Shown one piece after another: positions 1,280-64,000 of a DNA stretch of 64,000 nt. The notes under the pieces were generated by a model that was not told the DNA's origin, searched no databases, and saw nothing but the letters and a program-made list of their open reading frames with translations. Location: contig NIVC01001342.1 of the NCBI GenBank assembly GCA_002269645.1, forward strand, positions 246,325 to 310,324, given 5' to 3'. Source of the stretch: Macrostomum lignano (taxonomy: Eukaryota). Each line of letters starts with the position of its first letter. Position 1 is the first letter of the stretch. A program made the position numbers and the translations under genes.

Positions 1280-26112
<24,833 letters not shown>

Positions 26113-31503: not shown

Positions 31504-31998
31504 CTCTAGGCTACCTTTATAAGTGCCACGGGATCTGCCACCCTGCAGCTGGGATTTCAGATAAATCTGGGAGAAACCGTAGAAGTTAAAAAAAGCTGAA
31601 ACGCGCACAAAATTAAGAGGAGAATGCGGGCAAGCCGGAGCCAGGAAGCCGGCATACTCGATGCAAGTTCCGCCACTAGAGCCTCAGTCACGCAAGGCCA
31701 GGCCCAGCCTCCGGCACGCAAACTGACCGATGCAGGCACAGAAAAAATTTGAAGCCAAAATGGTTGAGAATGGGGCAAAATATAACTAAATAACGGGGGG
31801 GGGGCAGCGGGGAGCGAATGAGCGCACAGACGGAGCGTGGGTCATCGGAGACAGAAAAAGCGCGGGGAGCGGCTAGAAAATAAGAGAAAACGAGCACAAA
31901 AACACGCCGGACACTCCGCAGAGCGCTGTTTAGGTCAGTATCCGGGTGGGACGCCCGGGCCACAGACGCCCGTCAGTTGCGGAGGCCCGCCCGGCCGC

Positions 31999-37900: not shown

Positions 37901-40900
37901 GGTCCGATTTTCAAGACCAGGATACACTGCACTGCTGCAAACCAAAACTGGTCTAACACTAATAGTGTGTTTCAAATTACTGGCTAATTCTAAGAATATG
38001 AAGTTACAGACTTAAGATGTCCATAACACTAAATTGTGAAGTCTGCATCACATCCTTGCAAAAAATTCTGGTGCACTTTTTGCACCAAGTCAAATTTCTG
38101 GGTGCAATTTTTAAGACCAAGATGCTATTCGCACCTATTTGCACAAAAAACCCAGGCTTGGAGTGTCTAGATTAATGTAATAAAAACTTGGCTTTCTATT
38201 AGTGATGAATCGAAATTATTTTTCAAATCAAAATCGAAATTTTTGAGCTTAACAAATTTTTACTTTTTCGCTAATCATGCAAAAAGGTTAACACCTTGCC
38301 TTTGCATGTATGAGCTTACATGTTGTATAAAAAGTATCTTTGATATGTTTAAACCAGAATACTTAAGATTTAACTTACTTTAAAAATACGAAATAGAAAA
38401 TGCTGGTGTATTATGTATTATATACTTGTATATAGAAATATAGTAGAAGTTGTATTATACTTTACCATTGTTTAAGCTAAAGATCTAGATACGAGTAGCC
38501 TATATCCATTTCATTAAGGCTTTAAGTCTTTAGCCAATTAAAATCCACGCCAATGAGTTCAGCCAGTGGGCTTGAGGAGGTTGAGGTGGGTGCAGCACAA
38601 GGCCTGGAACAGTGTGTGCCTCGCACAATATTTCTTATAGAAAAGGCGATTCTCACCTCCCCACTGAGTCTTTGAACCGCACTTCCTTTCACTTCCTATA
38701 GATTTTCTTTCTCATGTAGCATGATCATCAATGTCTAAATTGTTAAAATATAACCAAAATTTTGAAATGATTTTTTATGAATAGTTGAAATTCAAAATTG
38801 AAATTATTTTGATGCAAAATTAGTTTTGAAATTTGGAATATCAAAATCGAAATTGGATTTTGATCTATCACTACTTTCTACATTCTATATGTTGGGTACT
38901 CTAGGTAGATACTTATTCTCATGCTATCCTAGTTTGACTTGGCAATTAACTCATGTTATAACTATATGATTTAGATTTACAAATGAAAAGTTGTAAAAAC
39001 TACAATGTGTTTTCTTTCATTTGAAAAAAACTTTGCCTTTAAAATCAATTTAAACTTTGAAAAACAGGAAAATGCAATTAGAAATAAAAGCAATATATAC
39101 TTGCTCAAGAAAGTGTATTTAGAAGCTAAAATAGTAAAAATTGCATGCAAATGAAAGTAGGCAGTTTAAAAAAATAGTTAAACTTTGCTAAATGAAATGC
39201 GTTTAAAAACACACACTTTATTATGCTTTCAAAGATATGCCTAAAAGTTATGAAGTTGAAATCTGTGAGGGCAGATATCCACAAAATTTCTGGGTTAGAC
39301 AACATTAAAACACTTTAGAGTTTGTCATTATATATTTTTCTAATTAGTGTTACAGTTAATATTGTATAAAAATCTCAATGGTTTCATTTAAAAACCTTAA
39401 AATATTGTTTTAAATTTGTTAGCCTTAATTTTCCTGCTATCCCATTTTTGTAGAATTACCCCTTTGCTAACTTGCAAAAGTCAACTTTTTATGTTTATTT
39501 CCTTTCACAATTTATCTAACTGCTGCTTCTAAAGTAAAGTACACTATGTTATACCTTGTTGGGACTTCTTGAACTTTAGGTAGATAAAATAGTTGCAGTT
39601 TTGATAGGATCATAATTTTGTCTCCATAGAGGTTTTTTATGGTGCTGATTTCAAATTTGAGCTTAACTTTTTTGTAGCTTAAAGCCAACCACTGGGACAT
39701 GGGGAATGGGGGGTTTTAGGATGGGGAGAATCTTCATGGGAATTAATTTTATCTACTTAAACTTCAATAGAGGCATAGGGATCTATTGAACAATGCTGGG
39801 CACTTCCGGTACTTAGTAACTTTTGAAAGTACTGCAATTTACTTTATCCTAAAGTGTTCCTTTTTGAGGTACTTTTTCAACTGGGTAACGGAGTAACGGT
39901 AACGGAGGCCTTTTTATGTAGTCTGGTCCTCCAGTCCTCTGTTACCAGCCATTAGAAATTCCTAGAAAAGAGGAATTTTTTAATATACTTCAATCTACTC
40001 AATAGAATGGATAGATAAATATAAAATATTTAAAATATGACTCTAAACACTATAATATTTATTTAGTACAGTGTTTTTTTTTTGTTAATTTGCTTCTTTT
40101 TAAAATGAATTTTAATTTTTTGGAAATTCCTGTTTATACGGCGTTTTTTTTGTTTTTGAATTTAATTGACTTAGTTAAAATTAAAATTGACTTAATTAAT
40201 TGTTTAATTCCAAATTCTTTCTTATTCTTATTTAGATTCTTACAACTTAAAAGGTAATTCGTTGATTGAAATTGCAAATTGTTAATTGAGTTGAATAGAT
40301 CTAGATCCTAGATCGAGAGTAACATTGACAACATGCAGTCTGCAACTGCAACTGTGGAGATCAATGACACTAAAAATTTTATTAATTCAAATCGGCGGCG
40401 TCATCGAATCAAAATATATTCAAACAAAATTTCTACCTGCAGGCAGGCATAAAAGGCTTTATTTTCATTTATTTGCATTTTCTACACCATGTAGAGCACG
40501 TTTTTATCTTTTAGGCACCAGAAAATCTGAAAAAATGACATTAGTGACAAAGTAACGGACTAAGTAACGGAAGTTACCAAAAAATTGAAAAGTAATGATT
40601 ACAAGTAATGAATGAAAAATCTGTTTTGGAGACTTTGGTAAGGGAAGTTACCAGTAATGTAATTTACTTTTTTAAAGTAACTTGCCTAGCACTGCTATTG
40701 AAGATTAGGTAGGTAAATTCTGAACCCAAGGGAGGGGGGGTCTGATGAGGGGGGGGGGGTCTGACAAGAGGGGTGGGCTGATAACTATTAACCACTGGGA
40801 CATGGGGAATGGGAGGTTTTAGGGTGGGGAAAATCTTCATGGGGATTGATTTTACCTACCTAAACTTCAATAGGCATGGGGATCTATTGAAGACTAGGTA

Positions 40901-42335
40901 GGTAAATTCTAAACCTAAGGGGGGTCTGATGAGGGGGGGATGGGCCAATAACCACCAATCATTAGGACATGGGGAATGCCGAATGGGGGTTTAGGGTAGG
41001 GAGATTCTTCATCGGGATTGATTTTACTTACCTAAACTTCAATAGAGGCATGGGGGTCTATTGTAGATTAGATAGATAAATTTGGAGACGGAGGGTTCCA
41101 GAGTGGAAATGTAATGAAGCTTAAATAAAACATTTAGCAAGTTATCAAATACCTCCATTGAGAAAAATTATAATCTTATCAAAGTAATTGATATCAGCAG
41201 CTATAATTACCTTTCAGAATAGAGAAGACAATACAGATTAGTAGACATAAATATATGTAAACATTTAAAGAATATACAGCTAGTCACAACCATGGGAGAA
41301 CAATAGCGAATCATAAGCAGGAGGAGGCGAGGGAGGGTGGTGGCGAATTCCATGAGTCAGCATTTTTTAAAAACACTAATTTGACGTAGCATCCTGATGC
41401 AGTATAACAAACTGAGTGAAGATAAATTAGAACAGACACTCCTTTTATTAGAGTTAAAAATTTAACCTCCTAAATGTTTTTTTACAATGAATTTATAATA
41501 ATTTTAGACAATATTTACCTTTGAAAGTCATGATTCTAAAAAAGTTTAATTTTAAAACATACAATTCTCCAAAACTACTTGCATCAAATTATCATTAATT
41601 ACATTGGGGATTAACAAATTGAGCTCCTGTTAACTCTGACAGTAATTTTTTGCAGTTTTCTTTGCTTTATTATCATTTTGGACAGCCTCTAGAGTCTAAG
41701 ACTCTGGCAAAAGTTTTAGAAAAATCGGAAAATCGGAAGTATTTTACATACCTAAAGTTAAAGAAGTCCCCTTGTTGTAGTACTGTCAATGTTAGACCCT
41801 AAAAAGCCTATCTTAAGCTAATAAGCCTAAGGCCAAACATAAATATATAAAGAATAAAGTTTAAATGTTAATGCCAATGATACAAAAGTCAAAGATAAAA
41901 TACAATAGGAAAATATCAAGAGGCTAGATTCATAAAATTTATATATTTTTAAAATATAATAAAAAACTAACTTCAAAACAAGAAAAGTCTTATTATTATT
42001 TATTTTTACTAAAGCTAAAGGTGAAGGTGATATAGGGCCTATAACAAAATTATTTTTAAATTAAGAAAAGATTCTATTAACATACTGTCCTGCTGGCCTT
42101 GTCGTTCTCTCCTTGGTTTTTTCGCCCCCGATTGATCTGCTGAGTCAGTCTTAGCAGCCTGCTTCACATCTTCTGGCTTTGCGGCCTTTGGATCCTTTTT
42201 CTTCTTTTGCTTAGATTTTTCACCCTTCTCAGCCAGTGCTGCCTGGAGGATTTCATCAGGATCTTCCACGTCGTCCAGTAGGAAACCAAACTTGTTTCCA
42301 GTGACAACGGTGTAACTACTTTCCACTTCAGTCAT
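31999..42335 (-). CDS. SERBP1: SERBP1/HABP4/Vig family mRNA- and ribosome-binding protein, ~514 aa
   Basis: Exons 42086-42335 ([30 protein letters not shown]; phase 1), 32951-33692 (RGG-rich; [29 protein letters not shown]; phase 2), 31999-32551 ([35 protein letters not shown]). Phases agree and total 1545 nt. REYERHSG, GxGxHNWG, MTLEEW and terminal FPxL are HABP4_PAI-RBP1 family motifs. Confidence 0.93.
33770..34012. repeat. 20-bp minisatellite
   Basis: gtgttaagtagttgaaggat. Confidence 0.95.
34910..36094 (+). mobile_element. Internally deleted mariner element with ~390-bp TIRs
   Basis: ~34910-35300 is the inverted copy of ~35700-36094 (ends gggtgtcccaaaag / cttttgggacaccc, TA-flanked). The interior encodes frameshifted transposase remnants [28 protein letters not shown] (HTH) and [21 protein letters not shown] (mariner YSPDL). 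Confidence 0.88.
36273..37036. mobile_element. Tc1/mariner-type MITE with ~120-bp imperfect TIRs and TA flanks
   Basis: tatactattttcttaggag..aaagccaatgcttgcccaaatttttgg (36290-36372) is inverted at ~36925-37015; TA on both sides. Confidence 0.7.
36555..36807. mobile_element. Nested MITE with ~65-bp TIRs and TAAT flanks (family unassigned)
   Basis: gggtcattcc..gggtcccatcatgtttttgaacttaaagcacttgtaact is inverted at 36750-36807; TAAT lies immediately on both sides. Confidence 0.7.
38200..38873. mobile_element. hAT-type MITE with 8-bp TSD (7/8 match)
   Basis: Ends tagtgatgaatc / gatctatcacta; flanks ctttctat (38192-38199) and ctttctac (38874-38881); repeated aaatcgaaatt subterminal motifs. Confidence 0.7.
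39688..41085. repeat. Degenerate ~170-bp tandem repeat (3 copies), split by the hAT MITE
   Basis: accactgggacatggggaatgg..aaacttcaatagaggcat..atctattgaa recurs at ~39688, ~40791 and ~40961. Confidence 0.75.
39791..40694. mobile_element. hAT-type MITE with perfect 8-bp TSD CTATTGAA
   Basis: Ends caatgctgggca / tgcctagcactg; CTATTGAA at 39783-39790 and 40695-40702; GTAAC(GG) subterminal motifs; it interrupts a tandem repeat. Confidence 0.85.
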
Positions 42336-44195
42336 TTTAGGTGCGGCTTGTTTAGTTTTGACACATTTTCAATTGTGAAAGCTCTTGCTTGAGAGTTTTT
42401 TCTGCATATTTTTGCTGAAGAACGTGAAGTGTTTAAATTAGTGCTAATAAAAGTGTTTACAACAAATATAAACTTGAACTTTCGAAAAAAGATAATGCTG
42501 AAAAAAAATAATAAAAATAAATAAAATTTAAATAAATAGTATAAGGAAACAAAAAATACTATCAACCAAACAATGAAAATTCCGTAAGCGAATAAATACT
42601 CAACTTTAATTCTTTTACACCAAACAATTCTGAGGACTTTTTTGAGACTGCCGTCTAAATAAGCTCATATAAAAACAAACTAAGCTTCATTGAAATCAAA
42701 TCATTGCCATTGGATGTTTTTCGGCATAATTTGGTCTATGACGTGAATAAATCAGTTGTCCATGGTTTAAAAAATGGTGTACATTTCTTATGATTTTGAA
42801 GCTATATCCTCGGATCAGGAGTGCGCGGAAGTGAATAGGGAAGCTTATAGAAAAGGCATTGGGGGGGTTAATGCTGAGGATGCTATACTGCTTATGATTC
42901 TATTAAAGGACCAATTGTGTAGTGACATACGTAGTTATCCACTGTACATAGTGACTGTGAGGATTCTATCGTAACCAGCGGACTAAAACAACAGTTGTGA
43001 CAGGCAGGTTGGGAGCAACACACAGTCAATGATCCGTTCTTTCTCTCTTCGACTTCGAATTTCATACGCCCAGGTAGCTTTACAACATTGAACGGTTGAC
43101 ACACAGGCCACGGACCACACGGTACTGTCTGTATGACTGTATAAATCTGTTACTACAGCGGTCCTTCGAAACATTTCCTGTTTCTAGAATCCGGCTTCCC
43201 GCATGCCAACAGCGCATCATTTCATCAAAATGATCTAGCTTACATTTGGTCGGACCATCGATATGCATTGACATCTAGAGCACTTAAGACAAAAATAAAA
43301 AGGTACGTTTAGCAGCTTTATGAATTATTTGACCTTTTCCTTCCCCTCATTTAAGTCTTCTGCCAAGTAGCAGATCTCATACAGGCTGTTCGCTTTTTTG
43401 AGATTTCCAGTCAAGTTTAAAGCACTATATCCATTATGCACTATAAAATTGCTTCTGTCAATTCATATGTTGTGCAATCGTGCCCTTTCTCGCCCTCCTG
43501 CCCCGCCCCAACCCTCCAGTCTGCCCCACCCCTCCGATCAATAATCAATGCGTACGCCGATCACACCACCCCGCCCCACCTCCCCTGCTGTACCGTACAT
43601 TTGTTCTTAAGTTATCAATATATTCATATACGCGTAGGACCAATGAAAAATATATAGCTCGTAGTCGCTGTCTGGAGGGCAGACTCCTCCCTGGCGCGCA
43701 TTGGTCCGCCTCCGTTGGCTATTGACTAAAACGACTCGTCGATCTACCATAAAAAGTGCACGGCGAACTGCATAGGCTACGGTGTGTAAGTTCGTGTTCG
43801 CGAGTTACTGTCCTTTTTCTGCTTCTCCCTAGGGCGCGGGACGGGAGCTCTGACTGGGGACCTGGGGGTCGCAGCTTCCCGACAGGTTAAAGCTGTAGGC
43901 GCTGCTCCGGAGGACGGGGCTCACAACACATATATGAATTGGGTACAGGTAGACTGTTAAAAATTAAAGTTAAACAAACAAAACTTAGCTTTGATTGATA
44001 GCTTTTAACTCGTCCGTTCCGTTATGTACTTTTTGGTGAAGCCAAATTTGATTAAAATATTCTGTGCAATGGACACCAGGGACCAAAAATCAGAAGTCCC
44101 TGACAGAAACATAAATTCAAAAAAACTTCGAGAGAGTAAAGCGTGCGTTCTCGCTGAGGAGTCAAAAAAAGCCCACCAGACAGCACCTTTCGGGA

Positions 44196-47731: not shown

Positions 47732-50298
<2,567 letters not shown>

Positions 50299-51973: not shown

Positions 51974-52605
51974 GGGCCAACCCCAGCGCCCGTGGCCCCC
52001 ATCCCCATCGCCCTTGTCACCACTCGGATCAACCAGTGGGTGGCTTCTAAGCACAGGGAGAGGTGGGCCAACGCCCCCGACTGCCGGCAATCCCGCGCGG
52101 CTGTCCCCTGTCCCTCCTCCGCCCTACGCAGGGCCCTGCTTGGACTCAACCTTAACCGCAGGGACATCAGGGCGGTGACCATGGCCCTCTCGGGTCATGG
52201 CTGCTTTGCCAGGCATCGTTACCTCCAGGAGAAAATCCGCAGTGAGGAATGCCCTTTCTGCCTCTCCGGTGTCGAGAATGCGGAGCACTTCATCTGTGAA
52301 TGCCCCGCCTTTACTCAGGACAGGCTCACCTACCTCGGCCCAAACCCGGACCTCTCCGACGTTTTCAGGCCCGAGAATCTCTGCCAGCTCGTCCGCTACC
52401 TAAGGGCTACTGGGCGAGCGAACATCCACCTCCTGGACTCTCCGGAGGGGGACCGCGCTGCGGACGCCGGCACCACCGGAACTCCCTGCGCGACACCGCA
52501 GCACTAGCTGCCCGTGGTCGCCAGGGGTTAGCGAAATGGGCGGCAACGCCTCCTCGCTGTTTCCGGACGCTGCAGGGAGCCCCCTGCAGCTAAGTCAAGT
52601 AAGCC
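51974..52605 (+). mobile_element. 5'-truncated non-LTR retrotransposon (RNase H-bearing, Loa/R1/I-like), ORF2 C-terminus plus 3' end
   Basis: [51 protein letters not shown]: post-RNase H region and CCHC zinc knuckle, followed by ~100 nt ending in taagtcaagtaag. Confidence 0.85.
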
Positions 52606-52951
52606 AACCCCAGCGGAACCCCAGCGGCCAAGTCAGCGGAATGGGCAGAATCGCCTCAGCGCAAATTGTTTTTCGTTGTCGCCGAAGGCGAAACTCATTC
52701 AGAGTAGCAAAATAATTACCGAGTTAAAATTCGCCACCGCGTGGAAAAATATTCAGCGTCTATTTCGTAGCTTGCTACTGTATGAACTACAAGTAGTATC
52801 ATGCCAGGAATAAAGCAATAAATAATTATAAAACCTGTTCGGTGCGCAGCAGGGTGGGCAGAAAAGTGCAAATAGAAAGGGAAATAAAATAAGAAGTATT
52901 TGTGAGGAATAATTCTGTGGAAGAGGCGGTGGGGCTGCGGCGTGGACGGCA

Positions 52952-53081
52952 TCAGTAGAGCTCGTAGGTGGTGTGCAGGAGGTCCCGCTCGGACACTTTC
53001 TCAACATTGCCCTCCCTGGCCAGCATTCGCTGATTGTAGTCGCGGTACCAGTTCTTCCGCTGCTCGTGGAGGCCGGAGAAG

Positions 53082-53135
<54 letters not shown>

Positions 53136-55068
53136 CGCTGCTTCTTGAGCTTCTCAGAGTAAGCCGCTACCGCGGCCCCGTCGCCGCCGCCTGCGGGACC
53201 TCCGGCCTGCCGCTCGGCGCCGGTGGCGTACAGCACTTCGCCCGGCTTCCAGTTCACGAACCGGCGCTGCCGACGCTGCGCCGCCCGTCCGCCGGCCTGC
53301 GAGGAGTTCGTCACCGTGGCCGCGTCCGCGTCTTCGCCGTAATAGTCGGCGAAGTCCATCAGCGAGGAGGTGGTGACTGGCTGGATCAGCTCGCCGCCGT
53401 CCGGCCGGTAGTGCGGCAGCTGCTCGGAAGGCTGCAGCAGCAGGCGGTCCGACAGCTCGTCGGGCTGCGGCTCGGCCTGCTGCGCCAGCGCCTGCGGCTG
53501 CTGCACCGGCGGCTGCTGCTGCTGCTCAAAGTTCCTGGCGTACTGGCCGGTGGACCGCGGCTCCAGCTGGGCGTCGCGCAGCCGCACCTCCGAGTAGAAC
53601 TGGTTGTTGTAGTCATCCGAGCTGATCAGCGCCACCCGCTCGCCCTCGGGGTTCACCCGGTAGCCGTGGCGCTCCCGCTGGCGCCGCATGGTCTCGCCGT
53701 AGCCCGGCGGCTTGCCCGCCCGCTTGTCCAGGCTGTACTGGCTGTAGTGCTTCTTGGGCGCGGCCGGGCTGTCCAGCAGGTTCTCCAGCCGGGGCAGCAG
53801 GTGGCCGAGGTCGTCGCCGGTCACCAGCTTCGGCTTCGGGTCGTAGAGCGGCCGCTCCTTCTTGGAGATGGACGACACGTAGGTGGCCGCGGCAGGCGGG
53901 TCGGCCTCCGCCACCCGGGGCAGGCGGGTCGGCACCTTCCGGTTGGACTTCAGCACCAGGCGGCCCTCGCCGTCCATGCGCACCTTCACATCGGCGTCCT
54001 CGTGCCAGTCGTGCCGGTAGTTCTCCAGCGGGGCCAGGATCAGCGACCGGTTGGTGACGGAGGCCGGGGCCAGCTCGAAGCGCCTGGCGTAGCCCTCGGT
54101 CTTGTACAGGTCCTTGGCGCCCCTGCCCGTCTCGGCGCCGGCCTCGGCCTCCTCCGGCTGCTGCGCCGGCAGCTCCAGCGGCGGCACCGAAGCTGCTTCA
54201 TCCGTCGGCTTCTTGCCCGCCTTGTCCGCCGCCTTCTTCTTCTCTGGGGAGGCCTGTCGGGGCTTGTCGAACTCGTGCCTGGCGTACTCCCACTCGTCCG
54301 GCTCCCGCTGCGGCTGCTTTTGCTGCGGCGGAGTCTTCTTCTTCTGCTGCTGCTGCTTCGGCTGTTTTTGCTTCTGCTGAGCCATACCGCCGCCCGGCTT
54401 TGCCTCAGCAGCTCCGGCAGATTTTTTATTACCTGCCAATTTGGCTTCACCGGATGGCTTTTGTGCGGCCTGTGAATTGTTGCCAGGCTGCTGCCTCTGC
54501 TCCCGTTCCCTCTTCTCCTTCTCCCGCTGCTCCTTCTGCCTCTGCTGCTCCTGCTGCTTCTGCTGCTGCAAATTTTGTTGCTGTTGCCGCTGCTGCTCTC
54601 TCTGCTTCTGCTGCTGCTCCTGCTGCTTCTGCTGCTGCTCCTGCTGTTGTCGCTGCCGCTGCTCTCGCCTCTCCTTCTCTTCCTGCAGCTGCTGCTGGCG
54701 CCGCTTCCTGTCCGCCGCCGCCGCCTCGGCCGCTGGATCGGCCTGCTTTGGGTCCCGCTCGTTCGGCAGCCGGCGATGTCGCGTGGCCGCCGGCTTGGCC
54801 GCCGCTTCGGCTGCCGTCCGCTGCGCGAACTCTCGCTGCCGTTCGCGCAAGGCCGCCCGCTGGCCCGCCTCCTCGCTGTTGGCTCGCCGCTGCTGCCGCC
54901 GCTGCTGCCGCGGCCGTCCCCGTCTTGCCGCTGCGCCCGCTGCTCCACCTCCTCCGCGTATTCCCGCCTGGACTCGAAGCCGCCACCTCTGCCGAGGTCC
55001 CCGGAGCCGCGGCGCAGCCTCGGCCGGTTGCTGTCGTGCTCCAGCCAGGGCAGCCGCTCGTGGTACAC
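52952..55068 (-). CDS. Large terminal exon: Gln/Arg/Glu/Lys-rich charged, partly coiled-coil region; probably the C-terminus of the tau-like gene
   Basis: The GC3-rich frame VYHERLPWLEHDSNRP..EYAEEVEQRAQRQDGDG switches near 54915 to the long frame RQQRRQQRRANSEE..LHTTYELY* (stop at 52952). VYHERLPW fits the [IV][FY]x[ED]x[LV]x[FW] inter-repeat motif that opens or follows the junction of the upstream repeat exons. The acceptor is AAG (weak), so the link is inferred. Confidence 0.7.
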
Positions 55069-55637
55069 CTTCCAGGGGTTCGGGGTCGCGGAGTCGAAGT
55101 GTGGAAGATTTGAAGAAGAAGCTTGACGGATGGGGCATAAAGCACGCTCTCAAGGAGCCCTTTGAACCACAGCATGCAGTGCCGACCTCTCCCCAAACCC
55201 TAATTTTAATAGGCCGGGGTTTTTCAGTTCACACACAGCTGATTGCATCAAATTTCTACTTTTATGGGGGGCGCATTTTACATGTGATATGGAGATTTTT
55301 ATTCAGCAAAAACTGCCCAATCTGCCGTGTGTGAACTGAAAAGGTTACAGCATTCATATTGTGTGCATAGAGTGCGCGGGATTGACTTCTGTGCTCAGAG
55401 TTTGACTCATGCGGTTGCCCACATCCGGGGTCCTTAATCCTCCACTCAATCCAGTTGCTAGGAGGAGGACTCAGGCTTACCAGCAACGGAAGGCGGCAGT
55501 CGGGACAGCTGTCTGAGCACTGCTGATTGTGCAGCGGGGCAGGACGGATGCTCTATTCAGAAACTTTACAATTACATGACAATGGCAAACACCCCAGGGT
55601 CTCGCCTGCGACCTCCGTGAGTCAGACTTGAAACTGT

Positions 55638-56470
55638 GTGCCTGTGTGATTAAGCTGTATGTAGTGTGCCTGTGTGATTAAGCTGTATGTAGTGTGCCTG
55701 TGTGATTAAGCTGTATGTAGTGTGCCTGTGTGATTAAGCTGTATGTAGTGTGCCTGTGTGATTAAGCTGTCTGTAGTGTGCCTGTGTGATTAAGCTGTCT
55801 GTAGTGTGCCTGGGGGATTAAGCTGTCTGTAGTGTGCCTGTGTGATTAAGCTGTCTGTAGTGTGCCTGTGTGATTAAGCTGTATGTAGTGTGCCTGTGTG
55901 ATTAAGCTGTATGTAGTGTGCCTGTGTGATTAAGCTGTCTGTAGTGTGCCTGGGTGATTAAGCTGTATGTAGTGTGCCTGTGTGATTAAGCTGTATGTAG
56001 TGTGCCTGTGTGATTAAGCTGTCTGTAGTGTGCCTGTGTGATTAAGCTGTATGTAGTGTGCCTGTGTGATTAAGCTGTATGTAGTGTGCCTGTGTGATTA
56101 AGCTGTATGTAGTGTGCCTGTGTGATTAAGCTGTATGTAGTGTGCCTGTGTGATTAAGCTGTATGTAGTGTGCCTGGGTGATTAAGCTGTATGTAGTGTG
56201 CCTGTGTGATTAAGCTGTATGTAGTGTGCCTGTGTGATTAAGCTGTCTGTAGTGTGCCTGTGTGATTAAGCTGTATGTAGTGTGCCTGTGTGATTAAGCT
56301 GTATGTAGTGTGCCTGTGTGATTAAGCTGTATGTAGTGTGCCTGTGTGATTAAGCTGTCTGTAGTGTGCCTGTGTGATTAAGCTGTATGTAGTGTGCCTG
56401 TGTGATTAAGCTGTCTGTAGTGTGCCTGTGTGATTAAGCTGTCTGTAGTGTGTCTGCATGATTAAGCTGT
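55638..56470. repeat. 28-bp minisatellite
   Basis: gtgtgcctgtgtgattaagctgtatgta. Confidence 0.97.
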
Positions 56471-56563
56471 GGTGTGCCTGTTCCTCAAAACAAAACTCCT
56501 TCCCTCAGTTTCACTGCTCACTGCATCCCGGATGCATCCCTAGATCCCGGATCTCCAACTCAC

Positions 56564-59500
56564 TCGAATTCCAGGCCGCCTGGGCTCGTAGTCCTTGTTC
56601 TCCAGAGATCTGACCTTTGGCTGCGCCCTGTCCGTGAAGTCCAGCTGGTCGTTGAAAATCTGAGTTTTTTGGTAGGCATTTAGGAAGGAGAAAAATAAGA
56701 TTCTGAACTATTTCCAGGATACAAGTGAATGGAAACTGGTAAATCAATGTGTTATTTTAGTTAGCGGCACAGCAAAACGCGGGTGTTGTTCGAAACTTGG
56801 CTGGCTGGTGAGAGTGGCCAAAGAAACTCTCGAGTCACAGAAGCGCCAAAGACTGCATAGGGTGAAAAATATTGTCAGAATTATTGGCAAACAGGGAGAA
56901 GCAACTTGTGAGAAGGTGCAAAGCGTCAGGGCTGAGGGCTACCGAACCCAGGGCTGGCGCGGTCCGCACGCCTCACCCGCGTTTTGGACGGCCGGCTCTG
57001 GTAGTCGATGTTCTCCCTGGTGTTCAGGGCCGGCTTGTCCGTCCATCGAAGCCGCTCGCTGTACACAAACTGCCATCGAGCAGTCGAGAGGGAACAATGC
57101 GTTGGTAAAACACTGTCACGTAACTCAAGTTCTCATTACGACATTTATTCGGGTTATTTACGATTTTTCGCGGGTTTTCTACGAAACCAATGATTTCAAA
57201 AAAAGACAAGGTTTTCCGTCAAATAAGTTCCGAGTTTTCCGGGAAACAAATACGTTTAGGAAGAGATTTTTTTAAAGCCATTTGTTCACTCAGTTTTCTA
57301 GCAATTATTTAATTTAAATACACGAATGCTTTTCTTAAAATGACTTCAAAACAGCAGAAACTTTTCCGGGTTTTGCAAAAATAAGTTCACGAATAAGTTT
57401 GAAGGGCATTTTCCCAACGACCTCGAATACTAAATAATCTTAAGTTCGCAAAAACGCCAGGCCATTCGAAAGGCGTTGTTGCCCACCCTGTCAGCGAGCT
57501 GTCTGCACCCTCGATCGAGATTTTCTGTGTCCGGTAAAGTAATCACAAAAAAAATGTTTTCTTTCTCACTACGCTACAATTAAAAGGAATTGGCTACACG
57601 ATCTACTGCGAAACACAACAACTACATAAAAAAATATAACGCACAGGGAACTAATGAGCAAACGTATTAGTTTTTGCTACTTCTGGTTTTTATAATAATT
57701 TAAATTACAGTTATTTGGTTGGCCCAGTCACCGGGTTATTAATTTTCTATCAATTGTTGCTATGGTAACACTCTTTAAAAATAATTATGGTGATTATTAA
57801 CAACTAAAAACGGAACTCCTATTCATCGTGTTATTGTGTTTATCTATATCTACTGGATACAAATCAAATCAAGAGTTCTACTCCGCTATAAGTAGTATGC
57901 ATGGGGGTGTACTTTTTTGTCACCCCCGCCGGGCTTGTGGGTGGCGTTGTCCAAGGAGCCGATCTTGGAGTGCGCGTGCCACTGGACCGCTTCCTGGAAC
58001 ACCTGACAGCCGCCGCGAGAGTTTGTTGAATATCAGGGACTGAACAGCTCGTTCAAACTGAATGTTTTTGATTAGACTAAGCAGGAAATCAATCAAAGCC
58101 TGCTTTGATATAAAAATAAAACTTAAACATTAAAAAAAGCATTCCAATCTTCACCTTTTTGTCGCCTCCGCTGGGCCTGTACTCCGCATTCTCCAGCGAG
58201 CCAATCTTCGGCTTGGCCTCCTTCTGAAATTCAGCCGCTCGTTGAAGATGGGCTTGTTGCCGCCGCCTGCCAGGTTGAGTTTTGGAGGGTTGAAAATCTA
58301 GCTGGAATCGCAGTCGAATGTACATGCTAACTCTGCCTCTTCCGGGCCTCCAGGGTCTATCACGAGAAAGCAGTAAACAAGTGTACAGTAAATCTTGAAT
58401 TTCCTTCCCTTTTAAAAGTACATTCCAGCTCTGTCCTTTTCAGCCCTATCCCACCGACCCTACCGTTAGCTAGCAGTAAACAAGTGTACAGTAAATCTTG
58501 AATTTCCTTCCCTTTTAAACGTACATTCCAGCTCTGTCCTTTCCAGCCCTATCCCACCGACCCTACCGTTAGCTAGCAGTAAACAAGTGTACAGTAAATC
58601 TTGAATTTCCTTCCCTTTTAAACGTACATTTTAGCTCTGTCCTTTTCAGCCCTATCCCACCGACCCTACCGTCAGCTGGCAGTAAACAAGTGTACAGTAA
58701 ATCTTGAATTTCCTTCCCTTTTAAATGTACATTCCAGCTCTGTCCTTTTCAGCCCTATCCCACCGACCCTACCGTTAGCTAGCAGTAAACAAGTGTACAG
58801 TAAATCTTGAATTTCCTTCCCTTTTAAATGTACATTCCAGCTCTGTCCTTTTTCAGCCCTATCCCACCGACCCTACCGTTAGCTAGCAGTAAACAAGTGT
58901 ACAGTAAATCTTGAATTTCCTTCCCTTTTAAATGTACATTCCAGCTCTGTCCTTTCCAGCCCTATCCCACCGACCCAACCGTTAGCTAGCAGTAAACAAG
59001 TGTACAGTAAATCTTGAATTTCCTTCCCTTTTAAACGTACATTCCAGCTCTGTCCTTTTTCAGCCCTATCCCACCGACCCTACCGTTAGCTAGCAGTAAA
59101 CAAGTGTACAGTAAATCTTGAATTTCCTTCCCTTTTAAAAGTACATTCCAGCTCTGTCCTTTTCAGCCCTATCCCACCGACCCTACCGTTAGCTAGCAGT
59201 AAACAAGTGTACAGTAAATCTTGAATTTCCTTCCCTTTTAAAGTACATTCCAGCTCTGTCCTTTTCAGCCCTATCCCACCGACCCTACCGTTAGCTAGCA
59301 GTAAACAAGTGTACAGTAAATCTTGAATTTCCTTCCCTTTTATATGTACATTCCAGCTCTGTCCTTTTCAGCCCTATCCCACCGACCCTACCGTTAGCTA
59401 GCAGTAAACAAGTGTACAGTAAATCTTGAATTTCTTTCCCTTTTAAATGTACATTCCAGCTCTGTCCTTTTCAGCCCTATCCCACCGACAATACCGTTAG

Positions 59501-62500
59501 TAGCAGTAAACAAGTGTGCATTAAATATTGAATTTCCTTCCCTATCAAATGTACATGCCAACCCATTTCTAACCTTTAGCCAAGGACTACTCAAGTAGGA
59601 CGGGATCGGGAAACTACGTTTCTTAGAAAATGTTAAGGAGGCTGATTTTCGCCGAAAAATGCACCACGGAGATAGGAAGTTTTCACTTTTTCATTTTAAA
59701 ATTGTTATTGCCTTCGATAGGAGACAGAACCAATGCTCATCTTTTGATATGTTTTGCCTTTCTTATAGCTCTACTGATATTCGTGGAGCTTTTCGTTCAG
59801 AAAATTAGGATTCTATTCTATTCTATTAGGAATTTTATTCTCCGGCACGGCTCGGCGCATTGGTTTTATGAATCTATTCTGTCATTCTTAGCTGACTGTG
59901 TAACAATATGTGTAGCAATTATGATAAAATAGATTCATAAAACCAATGAGTCGAGCTGTGCCATGAATTTTATTATTTAGGTAGAGATGTCCGTAAAATA
60001 AAAATTGACATAGAATTCAAATTTTCTAAACGAACTACTCTTTTCCCACCAGCCATAACTCACCTGGTTGGTAGTCCTGGTTCTCCAGCGATTTAATCTT
60101 GCTCTCAGTCTGAAATTCCACTTTTTCGTGGAAAATCTTTCTCTGAAATGACAACAAAACGATGTTTAGCTTCGAATTTAACGATTTCTTTTCAAAAGCA
60201 TTTCAATTTATGCACCATGATAAATTTTTAGCTAGCTTACACTCCCTCCTCCAGGCTTGTAATCCTCATTGTAGGCATCCACCTTGGGCTGGATCTCCTC
60301 ACCTCGGGGGGTGACCCCTGCAAGGAAGGCAGATACGGTTCTTTGTTGGAAGTCCTGGTAAGACTTTAGAGCAGTCTCAAAGCTCCTATTAGGGTCATTT
60401 AGTTTATCATGACAATTGAACTGATATCAGATTTGATAAATATTCCAGCGTACACTCGTATACACTTAAAAAGTGACAAATTAGGCCGAAATGGCAACAT
60501 GAGAGTTGCCATTTTGAATTTGGGACTCTCACCAGGTCTGACAGCATGAGAGTCCCAAATACAGGGTCTGACAGCATGAGAGTCCCAAATACAGGGTCTG
60601 ACAGCATGAGAGTCTCAAATACCAGGGTCTGACAGCATGAGAGTCCTAAATTCCAGGTTCTGACAGCATGAGAGTCCCAAATACAGGGTCTGACAGCATG
60701 AGAGTCCCAAATACAGTCTCGACAAATACCAGGGTCTGACAGCATGAGAGTCCTAAATTCCAGGTCTGACAGCATGAGAGTCCTAAATTCCAGGGTCTGA
60801 CAGCATGAGAGTCCTAATTCCAGGGTCTGACAGCATGAGAGTCCTAAATTCCAGGGTCTGACAGCATGAGAGTCCTAAATTCCAGGGTCTGACAGCATGA
60901 GAGTCCCTAAATCCAGGGTCTGACAGCATGAGAGTCCAAATACAGGGTCTGACAGCATGAGAGTCCCAAATACAGGGTCTGACAGCATGAGAGTCCAAAT
61001 ACAGGGTCTGACAGCATGAGAGTCCTAAATTCCAGGGTCTGACAGCATGAGAGTCCTAAATTCCAGGGTCTGACAGCATGAGAGTCCTAAATTCCAGGGT
61101 CTGACAGCATGAGAGTCCTAAATTCCAGGGTCTGACAGCATGAGAGTCCTAAATTCCAGGGTCTGATAGCATGAGAGTACCAAATACAGGGTCTGACAGC
61201 ATGAGAGTCCTAAATTCCAGGGTCTGACAGCATGAGAGTCTCGAATGTCACAGTCTGACAGCATGAGAGTCCAAATACAGGGTCTGACAGCATGAGAGTA
61301 CCAAATACAGGGTCTGACAGCATGAGAGTCTCGAATGTCACAGTCTGACAGCATGAGAGTCCTAAATTCCAGGGTCTGACAGCATGAGAGTCTCGAATGT
61401 CACAGTCTGACAGCATGAGAGTCCCAAATACAGGGTCTGACAGCATGAGAGTACCAAATACAGGGTCTGACAGCATGAGAGTCTCGAATATCACAGTCTG
61501 ACAGCATGAGAGTCCTAAATTCCAGGGTCTGACAGCATGAGAGTCTCGAATGTCACAGTCTGACAGCATGAGAGTCTCGAATGTCACAGTCTGACCGCAT
61601 TAGAGTCTCGAATGTCACAGTCTGACAGCATGAGAGTCCCAAATACAGGGTCTGACAGCATGAGAGTCCAAATACAGGGTCTGACAGCATGAGAGTACCA
61701 AATACAGGGTCTGACAGCATGAGAGTCCCAAATTCCAGGTCTGACAGCATGAGAGTCTCGAATGTCACAGTCTGACAGCATGAGAGTCTCGAATGTCACA
61801 GTCTGACAGCATGAGAGTACCAAATACAGGGTCTGACAGCATGAGGGTCCTAAATTCCAGGGTCTGACAGCATGAGAGTCTCGAATGTCACAGTCTGACA
61901 GCATGAGAGTCCTAAATTCCAGGGTCTGACAGCATGAGAGTCTCGAATGTCACAGTCTGACAGCATGAGAGTCTCGAATGTCACAGTCTGACAGCATGAG
62001 AGTCTCGAATGTCACAGTCTGACAGCATGAGAGTCCAAATACAGGGTCTGACAGCATGAGAGTCCCAAATTCCAGGGTCTGACAGCATGAGAGTCCCGAA
62101 TGTCACAGTCTGACAGCATGAGAGTCCCAAATGCCATCTGACACAGCAGAGTCCCGAATGTCACAGTCTGACAGCATGAGAGTACCAAATACAGGTCTGA
62201 CAGCATGAGAGTCCCAAATTCCAGGGTCTGACAGCATGAGAGTCCCAAATTCCAGGGTCTGACAGCATGAGAGTCCCGAATGTCACAGTCTGACAGCATG
62301 AGAGTCCCAAATGCCAGGGTCTGACACAGCAGGGCAGTCCCGAATGTCACAGTCTATCAGCCTGAGAGTCCCAAATTCAAGGGTCTGACAGCATGAGAGT
62401 CCCAAATGCCAGGGTCTGACACAGCAGGGGAGTCCCAGATTCCCAGATCCCTGGGTCCCGCAGCGCCCCAGATCCCCAGATCCCAGAGTCCCGCAGCGCC

Positions 62501-62678
62501 CCAGATCCTCAGATCCCAGGGTCCCGCAGCGCCCCAGATCCTCAGATCCCAAGGTCCGCAGCGCCCCAGATCCCCAGCTCGGCCCCGAAGTCCCCAGAGC
62601 CGCCGCCGGTGCCTCACAGTCGGCAGGCAGGCCGATGCGCATTCGCTGCTGCCTCGGCGTGTCCTCCTCCTCGGCCAT
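56564..62678 (-). CDS. Tau/MAP2/MAP4-family microtubule-binding repeat protein, repeat-encoding exons
   Basis: Exons 62618-62678 (ATG MAEEEDT..), 60241-60317, 60064-60142, 58155-58266 (1 nt short), 57913-58002, 56977-57069, 56564-56659. They encode QPKVDAYNEDYKPGGG / ESKIKSLENQDYQPGGGNK / KPKIGSLENAEYRPSGGDKK / HSKIGSLDNATHKPGGGDKK / KPALNTRENIDYQSRPSK / QPKVRSLENKDYEPRRPG, matching the tau repeat SKIGSLDNxxHxPGGGxKK. Confidence 0.88.
58369..59520. repeat. 103-bp tandem repeat, ~11 copies
   Basis: agcagtaaacaagtgtacagtaaatcttgaatttcc..ccctaccgttagct; consecutive starts at 58369 and 58472. Confidence 0.97.
59580..59955. mobile_element. Second copy of the dispersed repeat, with an internal inverted duplication
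   Basis: See 8640-8917; cggcacggctcggcgcattggttttatgaatcta is the inverse of tagattcataaaaccaatgagtcgagctgtgcc. Confidence 0.7.
60535..62580. repeat. ~30-bp minisatellite with several variant types, followed by a short ~33-bp repeat
   Basis: gggtctgacagcatgagagtcccaaataca / ..ctcgaatgtcacagtctgac; cagatcccagggtcccgcagcgccc at 62440-62580. Confidence 0.95.
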
Positions 62679-63384
62679 GATCTCCGGGATCGTCCTTCCG
62701 AACTCGTCGAAGCTTCTGAACTCTCTCGCCTGAGCTGCTCCTCAGCTCTCAGCCTGCTCAGCGCTCGGAGCGCCGCTCGCCATATTTGAGCGAGTTTGTC
62801 CAGTCTCAGCTCAGTTCGAATCCGATTGGCCTACCCCCGAGTACACTTGTTCTCCTCTGCTCTCGCTGCTCTTTATCAGTTGCAATCTTTCATATTAAAT
62901 AACTCTGTGTTTCTCTTCTCTGCGTTTTGATGCTTGAAAAAACTGCGAGCAAAAGGAGCGTCTTGTTGCTTTTGATGCGCAGCAGTTCACCCCGAGGGGG
63001 GGGGGGCAGCCAGGCTGAGAGAGGAGAGTCGGGCAGGCTGGGGAGGTGGTGAGGGTCGGAGACTGTCGAAGATGGCGTTGGCAACGGCAACAGCCAGAGC
63101 TCATTGTGTGCTCCATCAGCTCAGCCCACAAAGCAGCGCTGCTCACACGGCATCTCGCTCCCTATCTCCCTCTCTCCCTCTCACTTTTCGCAGCTCAAGT
63201 GCCCTCCTTGCGTACACCTCGCTAGCCCGTTTGCTCGCTGACAGTCGCAGTGCACCGGCCTGCCCGTTGCATCAAATACAAAGAGAAGGAGACGCGTAGA
63301 GATATGAAAATTGCGCTCTGTTTGCACAGAACTGGCAAACTTAAGTGCTCAGTTTATCTAGCGGCACCTAATGGGACTAAAATA

Positions 63385-63613
63385 ATGTCGAATTTGTCTA
63401 CTAATAGCGAGTGTAACAGTAGTGAAAGCCGCGTTTTGGCATCGGATTTTGCAATCTGTCCTGTCCCAAAAATAGTGCAAAGCCCTGAAGCCCAGCACTA
63501 CTCAGGCAGAGCTGAGGCCAGTGAGAACAGCTGGCCGACCCCGCAGCCACCACCCTGCTCGTGGCAGGGGCTGCAACCGCCGGTCCCCGCGCTCCGCCCC
63601 CAGTTTTTGCAGG
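63385..63613 (+). CDS. Possible first coding exon of a plus-strand gene divergent from the tau-like gene
   Basis: ATG at 63385 in an open frame (MSNLSTNSECN..PQPPPCSWQGLQPPVPALRPQFLQ) with a possible CAGG|GCAAGT GC donor. No family motif recognised. Confidence 0.25.
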
Positions 63614-64000
63614 GCAAGTTCACTCATGCGAGCAAAGGGACTCCCAGCCAAGCTGTTGCTATGCTGTTTCTAAGCCAAATTTCTGCTCAGTTTACTCACT
63701 TGAAAGGTTGCGTCAGCCCTTGCTTTTTATTGCATCTGGGTAAATAAGTTTGGATCGAGGATCGGACCCGCGTGGGGGCCCGATGTCCTTATGCTGCAAC
63801 CTATTTTTTTCCAGGAACTGAAGTCTATTTTAGCTGTTTATTCCTTACCAGCCGAAGGTTATTGTGGTTTGGCATAAGGTCACGCAGACGGCCTCTGCGC
63901 GTTCCAAAGCACTTCGATTGGAATAACAAAAACTGCAGCCAAAAAGTGCAGCAGAGACTCTTGGACTGGCTTGTGTTAGCCGTGTGCAATTTCGGCTGTC

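What the first reader, a model, noticed from the sequence alone, without database searches (positions are those of the whole stretch)
52952..62783. Inverted tau: six microtubule-binding repeats at the N-terminus followed by a ~700-aa charged tail
Seen: seven small minus-strand exons encode six tau-type repeats (best copy HSKIGSLDNATHKPGGGDKK) starting only ~28 residues after the ATG. Each repeat is followed by an [IV][FY]x[ED]x[LV]x[FW] motif (IFHEKVEF, IFNERLNF, VFQEAVQW, VYSERLRW, IFNDQLDF), and the large downstream exon opens with the same motif (VYHERLPW) at phase 0. Known: tau/MAP2/MAP4 and PTL-1 carry 3-5 repeats near the C-terminus behind a long N-terminal projection domain; the motif here resembles the tau R4-R' segment (GNKKIETHKLTF). 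Inference: a ~900-aa MAP with its projection domain on the C-terminal side, possibly a ciliary, sperm or neuronal specialisation. None of this is visible in the ORF track because the exons are too short.
Basis: partly seen in the sequence, partly recalled or inferred. Interest (0 to 1): 0.72.

Follow-up and report, generated by a model that had tools for sequence, protein, structure and literature searches.

The report
Flatworm tau-like gene, repeats first
This is a real tau/MAP2-family microtubule-binding gene of the flatworm Macrostomum whose binding repeats sit at the start of the protein and are followed by a long, disordered tail found nowhere else, but in this sequence the reading frame is broken twice, so the 900-residue protein is inferred, not read directly.

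Summary
The minus strand of 52952-62678 holds an eight-exon gene of the tau/MAP2/MAP4 family (Pfam PF00418, E 3.5e-38). Its closest relatives are Macrostomum lignano proteins.

Four corrections:
- The ATG at 62783 opens only a 13-codon ORF here. The usable ATG is 62678.
- Exon 4 lacks one base compared with the M. lignano model P0001, so the spliced frame breaks.
- VYHERLPW (55068) is not in the frame of the ORF that ends at 52952. A second +1 shift is needed near 54875-54911.
- The "[IV][FY]x[ED]x[LV]x[FW] motif" is simply the first third of each Pfam repeat.

Evidence that the repeats are N-terminal: an in-frame stop lies upstream of the start, and the short leader is conserved in a paralogue.

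Evidence that the tail belongs to the gene:
- The tail is truly coding (GC3 0.96-1.0).
- It runs on from the VYHERLPW half-repeat with no start codon of its own.
- The paralogue P0038 joins its last repeat directly to VYHERLPWLE.

The tail has no homologue in 1.8 billion proteins and is predicted to be mostly disordered.

Against a single polypeptide: the only database model of this gene ends by read-through after exon 7 (VSWRSGI).

Verdict: a new variant of a known family, of moderate interest. No RNA data could be examined here.

The parts
62618..62678 (-). Exon 1: ATG at 62678, MAEEEDTPRQQRMRIGLPAD plus 1 nt. Donor GACT|GTGAGG, phase 1.
   Evidence: The junction ...LPADW|VTPRGEE is reproduced in M. 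lignano protein P0001. The leader RQ..RIGLP.DW is conserved in paralogue P0038. GC3 is 0.90.
62742..62833 (-). 5' leader. It has a TAG at 62833-62831. The ATG at 62783 opens a 13-codon ORF ending in TGA (62744-62742).
   Evidence: P0001 begins right after the TAG. In its source the 62783 ATG is in frame (MAERRSRALSRLRAEEQLRRREFRSFDEFGRTIPEI-MAEEED). The window is one base shorter at each of four short base runs, within about 110 nt.
60241..60317 (-). Exon 2 (77 nt): half-repeat R1, KVDAYNEDYKPGGGS. Ends in phase 0.
   Evidence: Identical in P0001.
60064..60142 (-). Exon 3 (79 nt): RKIFHEKVEFQTESKIKSLENQDYQP plus the first base of the next Gly codon (repeat R2). A phase-1 intron lies inside PGGG.
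   Evidence: 100% identical to P0001. PF00418 37.7 bits on its own.
58155..58266 (-). Exon 4 (112 nt): GGNKPIFNERL(E)FQKEAKPKIGSLENAEYRPSGGDKK (repeat R3). One base is missing at about 58232/58231 (CTG-AATTTCAG).
   Evidence: Two frames. P0001 reads IFNERLEFQKEAKPK in a single frame. PF00418 39.8 bits.
57913..58002 (-). Exon 5 (90 nt, phase 0-0): VFQEAVQWHAHSKIGSLDNATHKPGGGDKK (repeat R4, the best copy). Probably a cassette exon.
   Evidence: PF00418 47.8 bits. Skipped in P0001. The equivalent exon (VFQQRFTWSVTSRIGSLENLRHRPSGGDRK) is present in paralogue models P0121 and P0122 and absent from P0038. The donor GTACAC is weak.
56977..57069 (-). Exon 6 (93 nt, phase 0-0): FVYSERLRWTDKPALNTRENIDYQSRPSKTR (degenerate repeat R5, no PGGG).
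   Evidence: An open frame between AG and GT. GC3 is 0.87 inside introns with GC 0.36-0.47. Not detected by Pfam alone. Skipped in P0001.
56564..56659 (-). Exon 7 (96 nt, phase 0-0): IFNDQLDFTDRAQPKVRSLENKDYEPRRPGIR (repeat R6). Donor GTGAGT. Reading through it gives VSWRSGI*.
   Evidence: Identical in P0001, which continues into VSWRSGI. PF00418 20 bits, E 6e-4.
54875..55068 (-). Start of exon 8 in the exon-7 frame: VYHERLPWLEHDSNRPRLRRGSGDLGRGGGFESRREYAEEVEQRAQRQDGDGRGSSGGSSGE. The frame break lies within about 54911-54875, at a 12-nt x2.2 tandem repeat.
   Evidence: GC3 is 0.94/0.88 in this frame from 55075 to 54925. The break is localised and the tandem repeat. P0038 has ...NEIK|VYHERLPWLE. 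P0122 keeps SNRPRLR.
52952..54874 (-). Rest of exon 8 in the +1-shifted frame: about 640 aa of tail (NSEEAGQRAALRERQ ... HTTYELY). Stop TGA at 52954-52952.
   Evidence: GC3 is 0.96-1.00 from 54400 to 53050. There is no ATG in this frame before 54379. No Pfam hit. No homologue. Mean pLDDT 48.

Best explanation
The locus is a Macrostomum member of the tau/MAP2/MAP4 family.

Proposed protein, in its intact form:
- A short leader of about 30 residues (about 65 if the upstream ATG is in frame, as in the M. lignano model).
- An array of four to six tau repeats, one per exon. Exons 5 and 6 are symmetric cassette exons whose inclusion varies, much as exon 10 does in human tau.
- An R'-like half-repeat (VYHERLPWLE) that opens the last exon.
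- About 700 residues of lineage-specific, polyampholyte, Q/E/K/R-rich and mostly disordered tail.

Inferred mechanism: the N-terminal repeats lie along the outer surface of protofilaments, as tau repeats do. The C-terminal tail projects from the microtubule as a spacer or interaction arm. This is the role that the N-terminal projection domain plays in canonical family members.

State of this window: the frame is broken by two single-base deficits, one in exon 4 and one in a 12-nt tandem repeat in exon 8. These are either consensus errors of the assembly or the first lesions of a decaying duplicate copy. I cannot decide between the two. Either way the architecture describes the intact gene.

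Shown: family membership, exon structure, N-terminal position of the repeats, coding nature of the tail and its continuity with the repeat exons. Inferred: that one mRNA joins exon 7 to exon 8, microtubule binding, and the projection role.
For: - Family membership: PF00418 E 3.5e-38. Three repeats each pass the cut-off alone. The best solved-structure match is tau bound to microtubules, 6cvn_D, E 1.8e-24. There are 189 family hits, led by M. lignano P0001.
- Splice junctions e1-e2, e2-e3, e3-e4 and e4-e7 are reproduced in P0001.
- N-terminal position: an in-frame TAG (62833-62831) lies just upstream of P0001's first residue. In the window, a TGA at 62744-62742 is in frame with ATG 62678. The leader RQ.(K/M)RIGLP.DW is conserved between the two paralogous loci.
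- The tail is coding: GC3 is 0.96-1.00 over 1.3 kb. Tail-wide GC1/2/3 is 0.74/0.43/0.88, like the Piezo exons in the same window (GC3 0.90-0.93).
- The tail is continuous with the gene. Coding periodicity starts at 55068 in the exon-7 frame. That exon opens with a tau half-repeat also found after the last repeat in P0038 (VYHERLPWLE) and in the canonical tau P0123 (IFNEHLPWLK). The shifted frame has no ATG for the first ~500 nt of its coding stretch.
- The frame break sits in a perfect 12-nt tandem repeat. No credible intron can repair it.
- The tail has 32% charged residues, 14% Q and pI 9.5. It is predicted mostly disordered, with one long C-terminal helix.
Against: - The frame is interrupted twice in the sequence as given.
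- P0001, the only database model of this gene, ends by read-through after exon 7 and lacks exons 5 and 6.
- No protein in 5.8 billion clusters or 1.84 billion representatives matches the tail, not even one from M. lignano. So no annotated model or transcript-derived ORF contains it.
- The exon-8 acceptor is a weak AAG.
- About 800 aligned residues of the neighbouring Piezo gene show no frameshift, so the assembly is not generally riddled with indels.
- The paralogue's tail appears to be only about 95 aa long.
- No RNA data could be examined.
Confidence: 0.6

Rival explanations
1. Short repeat-only MAP. The mature mRNA ends after exon 7 (or in intron 7), giving a protein of about 150-240 aa that is little more than the repeat array. 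The 2.1-kb exon is not joined to it. It would be a relic, or used only rarely.
For: - P0001 ends ...PRRPGIRVSWRSGI by reading through the exon-7 donor.
- No database protein contains the tail.
- The acceptor at 55069 is a weak AAG.
- Short tau-family ORFs with little beyond the repeats exist elsewhere, for example P0087 and P0053.
Against: - Exon 8 opens with the family's R'-type half-repeat in the phase left by exon 7.
- The paralogue P0038 shows that junction in a database model.
- The tail has a near-perfect GC3 signal, which unused sequence would not keep for long.
- P0001 is a stop-to-stop ORF of a gene model from an assembly whose neighbouring models are visibly frameshift-corrupted (P0121, P0122, P0124). 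Its 3' end is therefore weak evidence.
Confidence: 0.2
2. Decaying duplicate. Both frame breaks are real, and this locus is a young pseudogene copy in a genome with many near-identical duplicates. An intact copy elsewhere carries the function.
For: - Two independent frame breaks in about 2.7 kb of CDS. About 2.4 kb of aligned Piezo coding sequence in the same window shows none.
- P0001 has an intact exon 4 and also differs by a CAG codon, so it may come from another copy.
- The literal product stops in exon 6.
Against: - Every difference from P0001 is a gain or loss of one base in a short base run or of one microsatellite unit. There is no amino-acid substitution over about 600 nt. That looks technical rather than evolutionary.
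- Codon periodicity after the breaks is undiminished.
- With so few events, 2 versus 0 is not statistically decisive.
Confidence: 0.35
3. Canonical orientation after all. An alternative promoter and coding exons upstream of 64000 (outside the window) splice into exon 2 and supply a conventional N-terminal projection domain. Exon 1 would then be only one of several first exons.
For: - The exon-2 acceptor is a good phase-1 site that any upstream phase-1 exon could use.
- Only 1.2 kb lies between exon 1 and the window edge.
- The canonical tau P0123, which carries a similar post-repeat motif (IFNEHLPWLK), has an N-terminal region of about 200 aa.
- Nearly all 120 listed relatives have 100-190 aa before the first repeat.
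Against: - Both M. lignano loci (P0001 and P0038/P0121) start with the same short, conserved leader exon, preceded by non-coding-looking sequence.
- No M. lignano model with a long N-terminus appeared among the listed hits of either search (the best 120 of 189; all 5).
Confidence: 0.1

Closest known systems
Vertebrate tau / MAP2 / MAP4 (Pfam PF00418 family)
   Same: - Tandem 30-32-residue repeats with K-x-G-S ... P-G-G-G cores and hydrophobic inter-repeat segments.
- The best solved-structure match is tau on microtubules.
- One repeat per exon, with cassette repeat exons.
- The last exon opens with an R'-type half-repeat. Human exon 13 starts at about aa 369, just before IETHKLTF (PMC9735940).
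- From memory, human MAPT exons 11 and 12 are 82 and 113 nt, with a phase-1 intron inside PGGG. Here the figures are 79 and 112(+1) nt with the same phase.
   Different: - The repeats start about 30-65 residues from the N-terminus. They do not follow a long projection domain and a proline-rich region.
- There are up to six repeat units, not 3-5.
- The C-terminal region after R' is about 700 aa, not about 70, and has no homologue.
Invertebrate tau-like proteins (C. elegans PTL-1, Drosophila tau, arthropod and mollusc 'microtubule-associated protein tau')
   Same: Same repeat family. They are the bulk of the hits, at 35-56% identity over the repeats.
   Different: They have about 100-190 aa before the first repeat, four repeats and about 50 aa after the last one. 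None of the 120 listed has a long C-terminal tail.
Planarian Smed-MAPT-L1, -L2 and -L3 (Magley and Rouhana 2019, PMC6743461)
   Same: Flatworm MAP2/Tau-like paralogues with three or four tubulin-binding repeats that do not group with a particular vertebrate member.
   Different: Their sequences and domain maps were not available here: the figure is not held and no supplement is held. So neither orthology nor architecture could be compared. RNAi of these genes gave no testis phenotype.
M. lignano paralogue A0A1I8IZ88 (P0038) and its corrupted copies (P0121, P0122, P0124)
   Same: Same short leader, N-terminal repeats, cassette repeat exon and VYHERLPWLE(..SNRPRLR) junction.
   Different: Three or four repeats, and a tail of only about 95 residues that is unrelated in sequence beyond its first ~20 residues.

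Membership tests
tau/MAP2/MAP4 (PF00418) | Several tandem 31-residue tubulin-binding repeats scoring above Pfam's gathering threshold | tested here: met
   Whole protein 129.6 bits against 27, E 3.5e-38, four stretches. R2, R3 and R4 alone score 37.7, 39.8 and 47.8 bits. R6 scores 20 bits. R1 and R5 are not detected.
tau/MAP2/MAP4 (PF00418) | PGGG at the end of each repeat and a KXGS core | tested here: met
   PGGG in R1, R2 and R4. PSGG in R3. KIGS in R3 and R4, KIKS in R2, KVRS in R6. R5 and R6 lack PGGG.
tau/MAP2/MAP4 (PF00418) | Repeats in the C-terminal part, preceded by a long N-terminal projection domain and a proline-rich region | tested here: not met
   The first repeat core starts at residue ~31 from ATG 62678 (~66 in the P0001 reading). 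There are in-frame stops upstream. There is no proline-rich region. Caveat: alternative upstream exons outside the window cannot be excluded.
tau/MAP2/MAP4 (PF00418) | A pseudo-repeat (R') after the last repeat, followed by a short C-terminal tail | tested here: inconclusive
   An R'-like VYHERLPWLE is present. It aligns with the tau segment KK-IETHKLTF type, but Pfam does not score it alone. The region after it is about 700 aa, not about 70, and reaching it needs a +1 frame correction.
tau/MAP2/MAP4 (PF00418) | Gene structure: one repeat per exon, alternative repeat exon(s), conserved intron phases | tested here: inconclusive
   One repeat per exon, and symmetric 90/93/96-nt exons. Exons 5 and 6 are skipped in P0001, and the exon-5 equivalent is variably present in the paralogue models. 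The match to human exon sizes and phases rests on memory, apart from the start of exon 13 (PMC9735940).
tau/MAP2/MAP4 (PF00418) | Binds and stabilises microtubules | not testable with these tools
   Needs co-sedimentation or a cell-based assay.

The most novel reading that the evidence does not exclude
Macrostomum has turned the tau plan round. It would be a family member whose microtubule-binding array is N-terminal, is tuned by two cassette repeat exons, and carries a ~700-residue orphan disordered projection arm at the C-terminus. That would be a natural experiment on whether the side on which the projection domain sits matters for microtubule spacing and regulation.
Probability: 0.5. Interest if true: 0.5.

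Novelty: new variant of a known kind. Interest (0 to 1): 0.4.

Why it matters
The tau/MAP2/MAP4 family is defined in textbooks by an N-terminal projection domain followed by C-terminal repeats. A bona fide member with the opposite order would show that this order is not a functional requirement. It would also give a compact, genetically tractable case for asking what the projection domain does, since M. lignano supports RNAi and transgenesis (from my own knowledge, not checked here). The locus is also an example of a large orphan disordered exon grafted onto an old repeat module. Its practical importance is modest: it does not bear on tau pathology, and the architecture still needs transcript proof.

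Tried and rejected
- Hidden intron to repair the exon-8 frame. All GT..AG pairs of suitable length between 55010 and 54780 have poor donors, no pyrimidine tract and lie in coding-like sequence. Rejected.
- Internal acceptor at 'aatttcag' in exon 4 to explain its frame change. It fits the phase left by exon 2 but not that left by exon 3, and P0001 uses the whole exon. Rejected.
- Tail as a separate gene. The shifted frame has no ATG for about 500 nt of coding signal, and the exon begins with a tau half-repeat. Rejected.
- Plus-strand ORF 52973-54475 (500 aa). This is the usual antisense shadow of a GC3-rich gene, and its product is L/R/G/V-rich and does not look like a real protein. Rejected.
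- Homologues of the tail. None by word-index search, by full HMMER against 1.84 billion representatives or in Pfam.
- Contigs or transcripts carrying the gene. Exact look-ups of the 733-aa ORF, P0001 and P0038 found nothing. P0002 turned out to be an unspliced repeat-only ORF on a metagenome scaffold and is not informative.
- Structure of the tail. The single-sequence AlphaFold model has mean pLDDT 48. I ran no fold search, because a model of that quality gives meaningless matches.
- Calibrating the assembly's indel rate on the neighbouring Piezo gene. No frameshift appeared in about 800 aligned residues. This is too few events to decide.
- Planarian MAPT-L sequences. The supplement is not held.
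Full report
**What is in the sequence.** I read the minus strand of 52500-64000 and translated the candidate exons. This gives seven small exons with GT..AG borders:
- e1 62678-62618
- e2 60317-60241
- e3 60142-60064
- e4 58266-58155
- e5 58002-57913
- e6 57069-56977
- e7 56659-56564

A large terminal exon starts at 55068. Its stop codon is TGA at 52954-52952.
- KVDAYNEDYKPGGGS
- IFHEKVEF...KIKSLENQDYQPGGG
- IFNERL.F...KIGSLENAEYRPSGGDKK
- VFQEAVQW..HSKIGSLDNATHKPGGGDKK
- VYSERLRW...
- IFNDQLDF...KVRSLENKDYEPRRPGIR
- VYHERLPW, directly after an AG

The exons are GC-rich (GC 0.56-0.75, except exon 3 at 0.41). They have high third-position GC and lie in AT-richer introns. Three of the introns are filled with large tandem arrays.

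**Is it more than chance?** Yes. The spliced product matches Pfam PF00418 (the tau/MAP tubulin-binding repeat) with E 3.5e-38 and 129.6 bits against a cut-off of 27. Its best match among solved structures is tau bound to microtubules (6cvn_D, E 1.8e-24). Scored one at a time, R2, R3 and R4 pass the cut-off (37.7, 39.8 and 47.8 bits). R6 is weak (20 bits). R1, R5 and the VYHERLPW segment are not detected. So 'six repeats' means three canonical repeats, one weak one and two degenerate ones. It is the known inter-repeat part of each unit and not a new element.

**Where the description fails.**
1. The ATG at 62783 gives MASGAPSAEQAES and then a stop in this sequence. The ATG that works is 62678.
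2. In exon 4, IFNERLNF and KIGSLENAEY are in different frames. The literal spliced CDS is 608 nt and runs into a stop in exon 6.
3. The terminal exon is 2117 nt. The VYHERLPW frame ends at 54040, and the 733-codon ORF that ends at 52952 is in another frame.

So two +1 corrections are needed to obtain the ~900-residue protein.

**Organism and relatives.** The best hit of the repeat region is Macrostomum lignano A0A1I8HWX5 (P0001, E 1.3e-78). The window is therefore from that flatworm or a very close relative. P0001 reproduces the junctions e1-e2 (…LPADW|VTPRGEE), e2-e3 and e3-e4. It reads exon 4 in a single frame as IFNERLEFQKEAKPK, so the window lacks one base (CTG-AATTT, where P0001's reading implies CTGGAATTT). 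It skips exons 5 and 6, joins exon 4 to exon 7, and then reads through the exon-7 donor to end VSWRSGI. I give it limited weight for two reasons:
- P0001 is a stop-to-stop ORF of a gene model. It begins directly after the TAG at window 62833-62831.
- It comes from a proteome in which sister models (P0121, P0122, P0124) are visibly corrupted by frameshifts.

A second M. lignano locus (P0038 and its corrupted copies) has the same plan:
- a short conserved leader (…RQRKRIGLPPDW);
- repeats from the start;
- a cassette repeat exon, present in P0121 and P0122 and absent from P0038;
- crucially, the last repeat joined directly to VYHERLPWLE.

P0122 also keeps SNRPRLR after that motif, as the window does. 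P0123, a tau with the canonical plan from an unidentified organism, has IFNEHLPWLK after its last repeat. The motif is therefore the family's R'-type half-repeat.

**Are the repeats truly N-terminal?** Three observations support it:
- In the window, a TGA at 62744-62742 is in frame with ATG 62678.
- In P0001's source, the ORF opens just after a TAG, and the 62783 ATG is in frame. This would add 35 residues.
- The leader peptide is conserved between the two paralogous loci.

The first repeat core therefore begins about 31 or about 66 residues from the start. By contrast, nearly all of the 120 listed relatives have 100-190 residues before the first repeat, four repeats and about 50 residues after the last. 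A few short ORFs have little before the repeats, but none has a long tail. I cannot exclude alternative upstream exons beyond 64000.

**Is the tail real, and does it belong to this gene?**
- Codon-position GC shows a very strong coding signal. GC3 is 0.94/0.88 in the VYHERLPW frame from 55075 to about 54925. It is 0.96-1.00 in the +1-shifted frame from 54400 to 53050. This is comparable to the Piezo exons in the same window (0.90-0.93).
- There is no periodicity upstream of 55068.
- The change of frame lies within about 54911-54875, at a perfect 12-nt x2.2 tandem repeat (GCAGCAGCGGCG).
- No plausible intron repairs the frame.
- The shifted frame has no ATG for its first ~500 nt.

The coding stretch 55068-52952 is therefore one exon with a one-base defect, and its first residues are a tau half-repeat in the phase left by exon 7. 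I conclude that the tail belongs, or belonged, to the tau-like gene.

The tail has these properties:
- about 705 residues, 32% of them charged;
- 14% Q, pI 9.5;
- an E/K/R/Q-rich block of about 90 residues, and a polyQ run near the C-terminus;
- no Pfam domain;
- no homologue in the 5.8-billion-cluster word search or in a full HMMER scan of 1.84 billion representatives;
- predicted mostly disordered, with one long C-terminal helix (mean pLDDT 48, single sequence).

**Error or decay?** Apart from one extra CAG in the window, every difference between the window and P0001 has the window one base shorter in a short base run. There are four such sites in about 110 nt of leader and one in exon 4. 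There is no amino-acid substitution over about 600 nt. That pattern looks technical, in one assembly or the other. The exon-8 break sits in a slippage-prone repeat. On the other hand, about 800 aligned residues of the neighbouring Piezo gene show no frameshift. The window is therefore not generally error-ridden, and M. lignano, as far as I know (not checked here), carries many near-identical duplicated genes. I put the chance that this copy is truly broken at about one in three. Either way the inferred architecture describes the intact gene.

**How it most likely works.**
- Shown: family membership, exon structure, N-terminal placement of the repeats, and a contiguous coding tail.
- Inferred: the repeat array binds along protofilaments as tau's does. 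Cassette exons 5 and 6 change the number of repeats. Both are symmetric, the exon-5 donor is weak, both are skipped in P0001, and inclusion of the exon-5 equivalent varies in the paralogue. The disordered C-terminal arm projects from the microtubule surface, taking the role of the usual N-terminal projection domain.
- The tissue is unknown. In planarians, two of three MAP2/Tau-like genes are testis-enriched (PMC6743461). This makes a germline role a fair lead and nothing more.

**Comparison and novelty.** This is a member of the PF00418 family by sequence. It departs from the family's defining layout in the position of the repeats and the length of the C-terminal region. From memory, the exon pattern e3/e4 (79 nt, then 112+1 nt, with a phase-1 intron inside PGGG) mirrors human MAPT exons 11 and 12 (82 and 113 nt). 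The last exon starting at the R' segment agrees with human exon 13 starting at about aa 369 (PMC9735940). I found no paper on tau-like genes of Macrostomum. I rate it a new variant of a known kind, with interest 0.4. It is a neat evolutionary rearrangement, not a surprise in mechanism, and it still lacks transcript proof.

**What remains open.**
- Whether one mRNA joins exon 7 to exon 8.
- Whether the two frame breaks are real.
- Whether alternative upstream exons exist.
- Where the gene is expressed.
- Whether the protein binds microtubules.

Noticed in passing
window 1-25000, minus strand: A large Piezo-type mechanosensitive channel gene. Pfam matches: Piezo_THU9_anchor at 1211-1861, THU_Piezo1 at 5741-6880, Piezo_TM25-28 at 9689-10126. 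PDB Piezo1/2 matches reach E 1e-88. Its introns are packed with tandem repeats.
   Followed up: partly
window 60531-62443, 58369-59560, 55636-56470: Introns 1, 3 and 7 of the tau-like gene each hold a long tandem array: 31-nt unit x56, 103-nt unit x11.6 and 28-nt unit x30. The first array has many one-base length differences between copies. The other two have almost none.
   Followed up: partly
window 62742-62783: A 13-codon upstream ORF (MASGAPSAEQAES*) precedes the working ATG. In the M. lignano model P0001 the same ATG is in frame with the main ORF, because P0001's leader implies one extra base at each of four sites within about 110 nt.
   Followed up: partly
window 49900-50298, plus strand: An exon encoding the C-terminal part of a fibrinogen-related domain (Pfam Fibrinogen_C, E 2e-14). 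It lies just after a ~1.5-kb (GTCT)n-type microsatellite (48404-49900).
   Followed up: no
window 31999-32610, minus strand: An ORF with a HABP4/PAI-RBP1 (SERBP1-like) mRNA-binding domain and an RGG-rich C-terminus (Pfam E 7e-5).
   Followed up: no
window 51992-52507, plus strand: A 171-aa ORF whose cysteine/histidine pattern (CPFC...HFICECPAF) resembles, by eye, the C-terminal end of a non-LTR retrotransposon ORF2. It has no Pfam hit. It lies just downstream of the 3' end of the tau-like gene.
   Followed up: no
window 26000-43000: An AT-rich block (GC about 0.28-0.35), interrupted by a GC-rich gene island at 32000-34000. This contrasts with GC 0.5-0.65 elsewhere in the window.
   Followed up: no
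database proteins P0001, P0038, P0121: The UniRef names of the M. lignano relatives ('BUD13 homolog', 'Methylcytosine dioxygenase TET', 'Microtubule-binding protein TANGLED') do not fit the sequences, which are tau-repeat proteins. P0121, P0122 and P0124 are frameshift-corrupted models of one paralogue.
   Followed up: partly
L001 4491-5564 (metagenome scaffold, ENA ERZ23487774): An unspliced 357-aa ORF (P0002) made almost entirely of about nine tau-type repeats starting near its N-terminus. The organism is unidentified.
   Followed up: no
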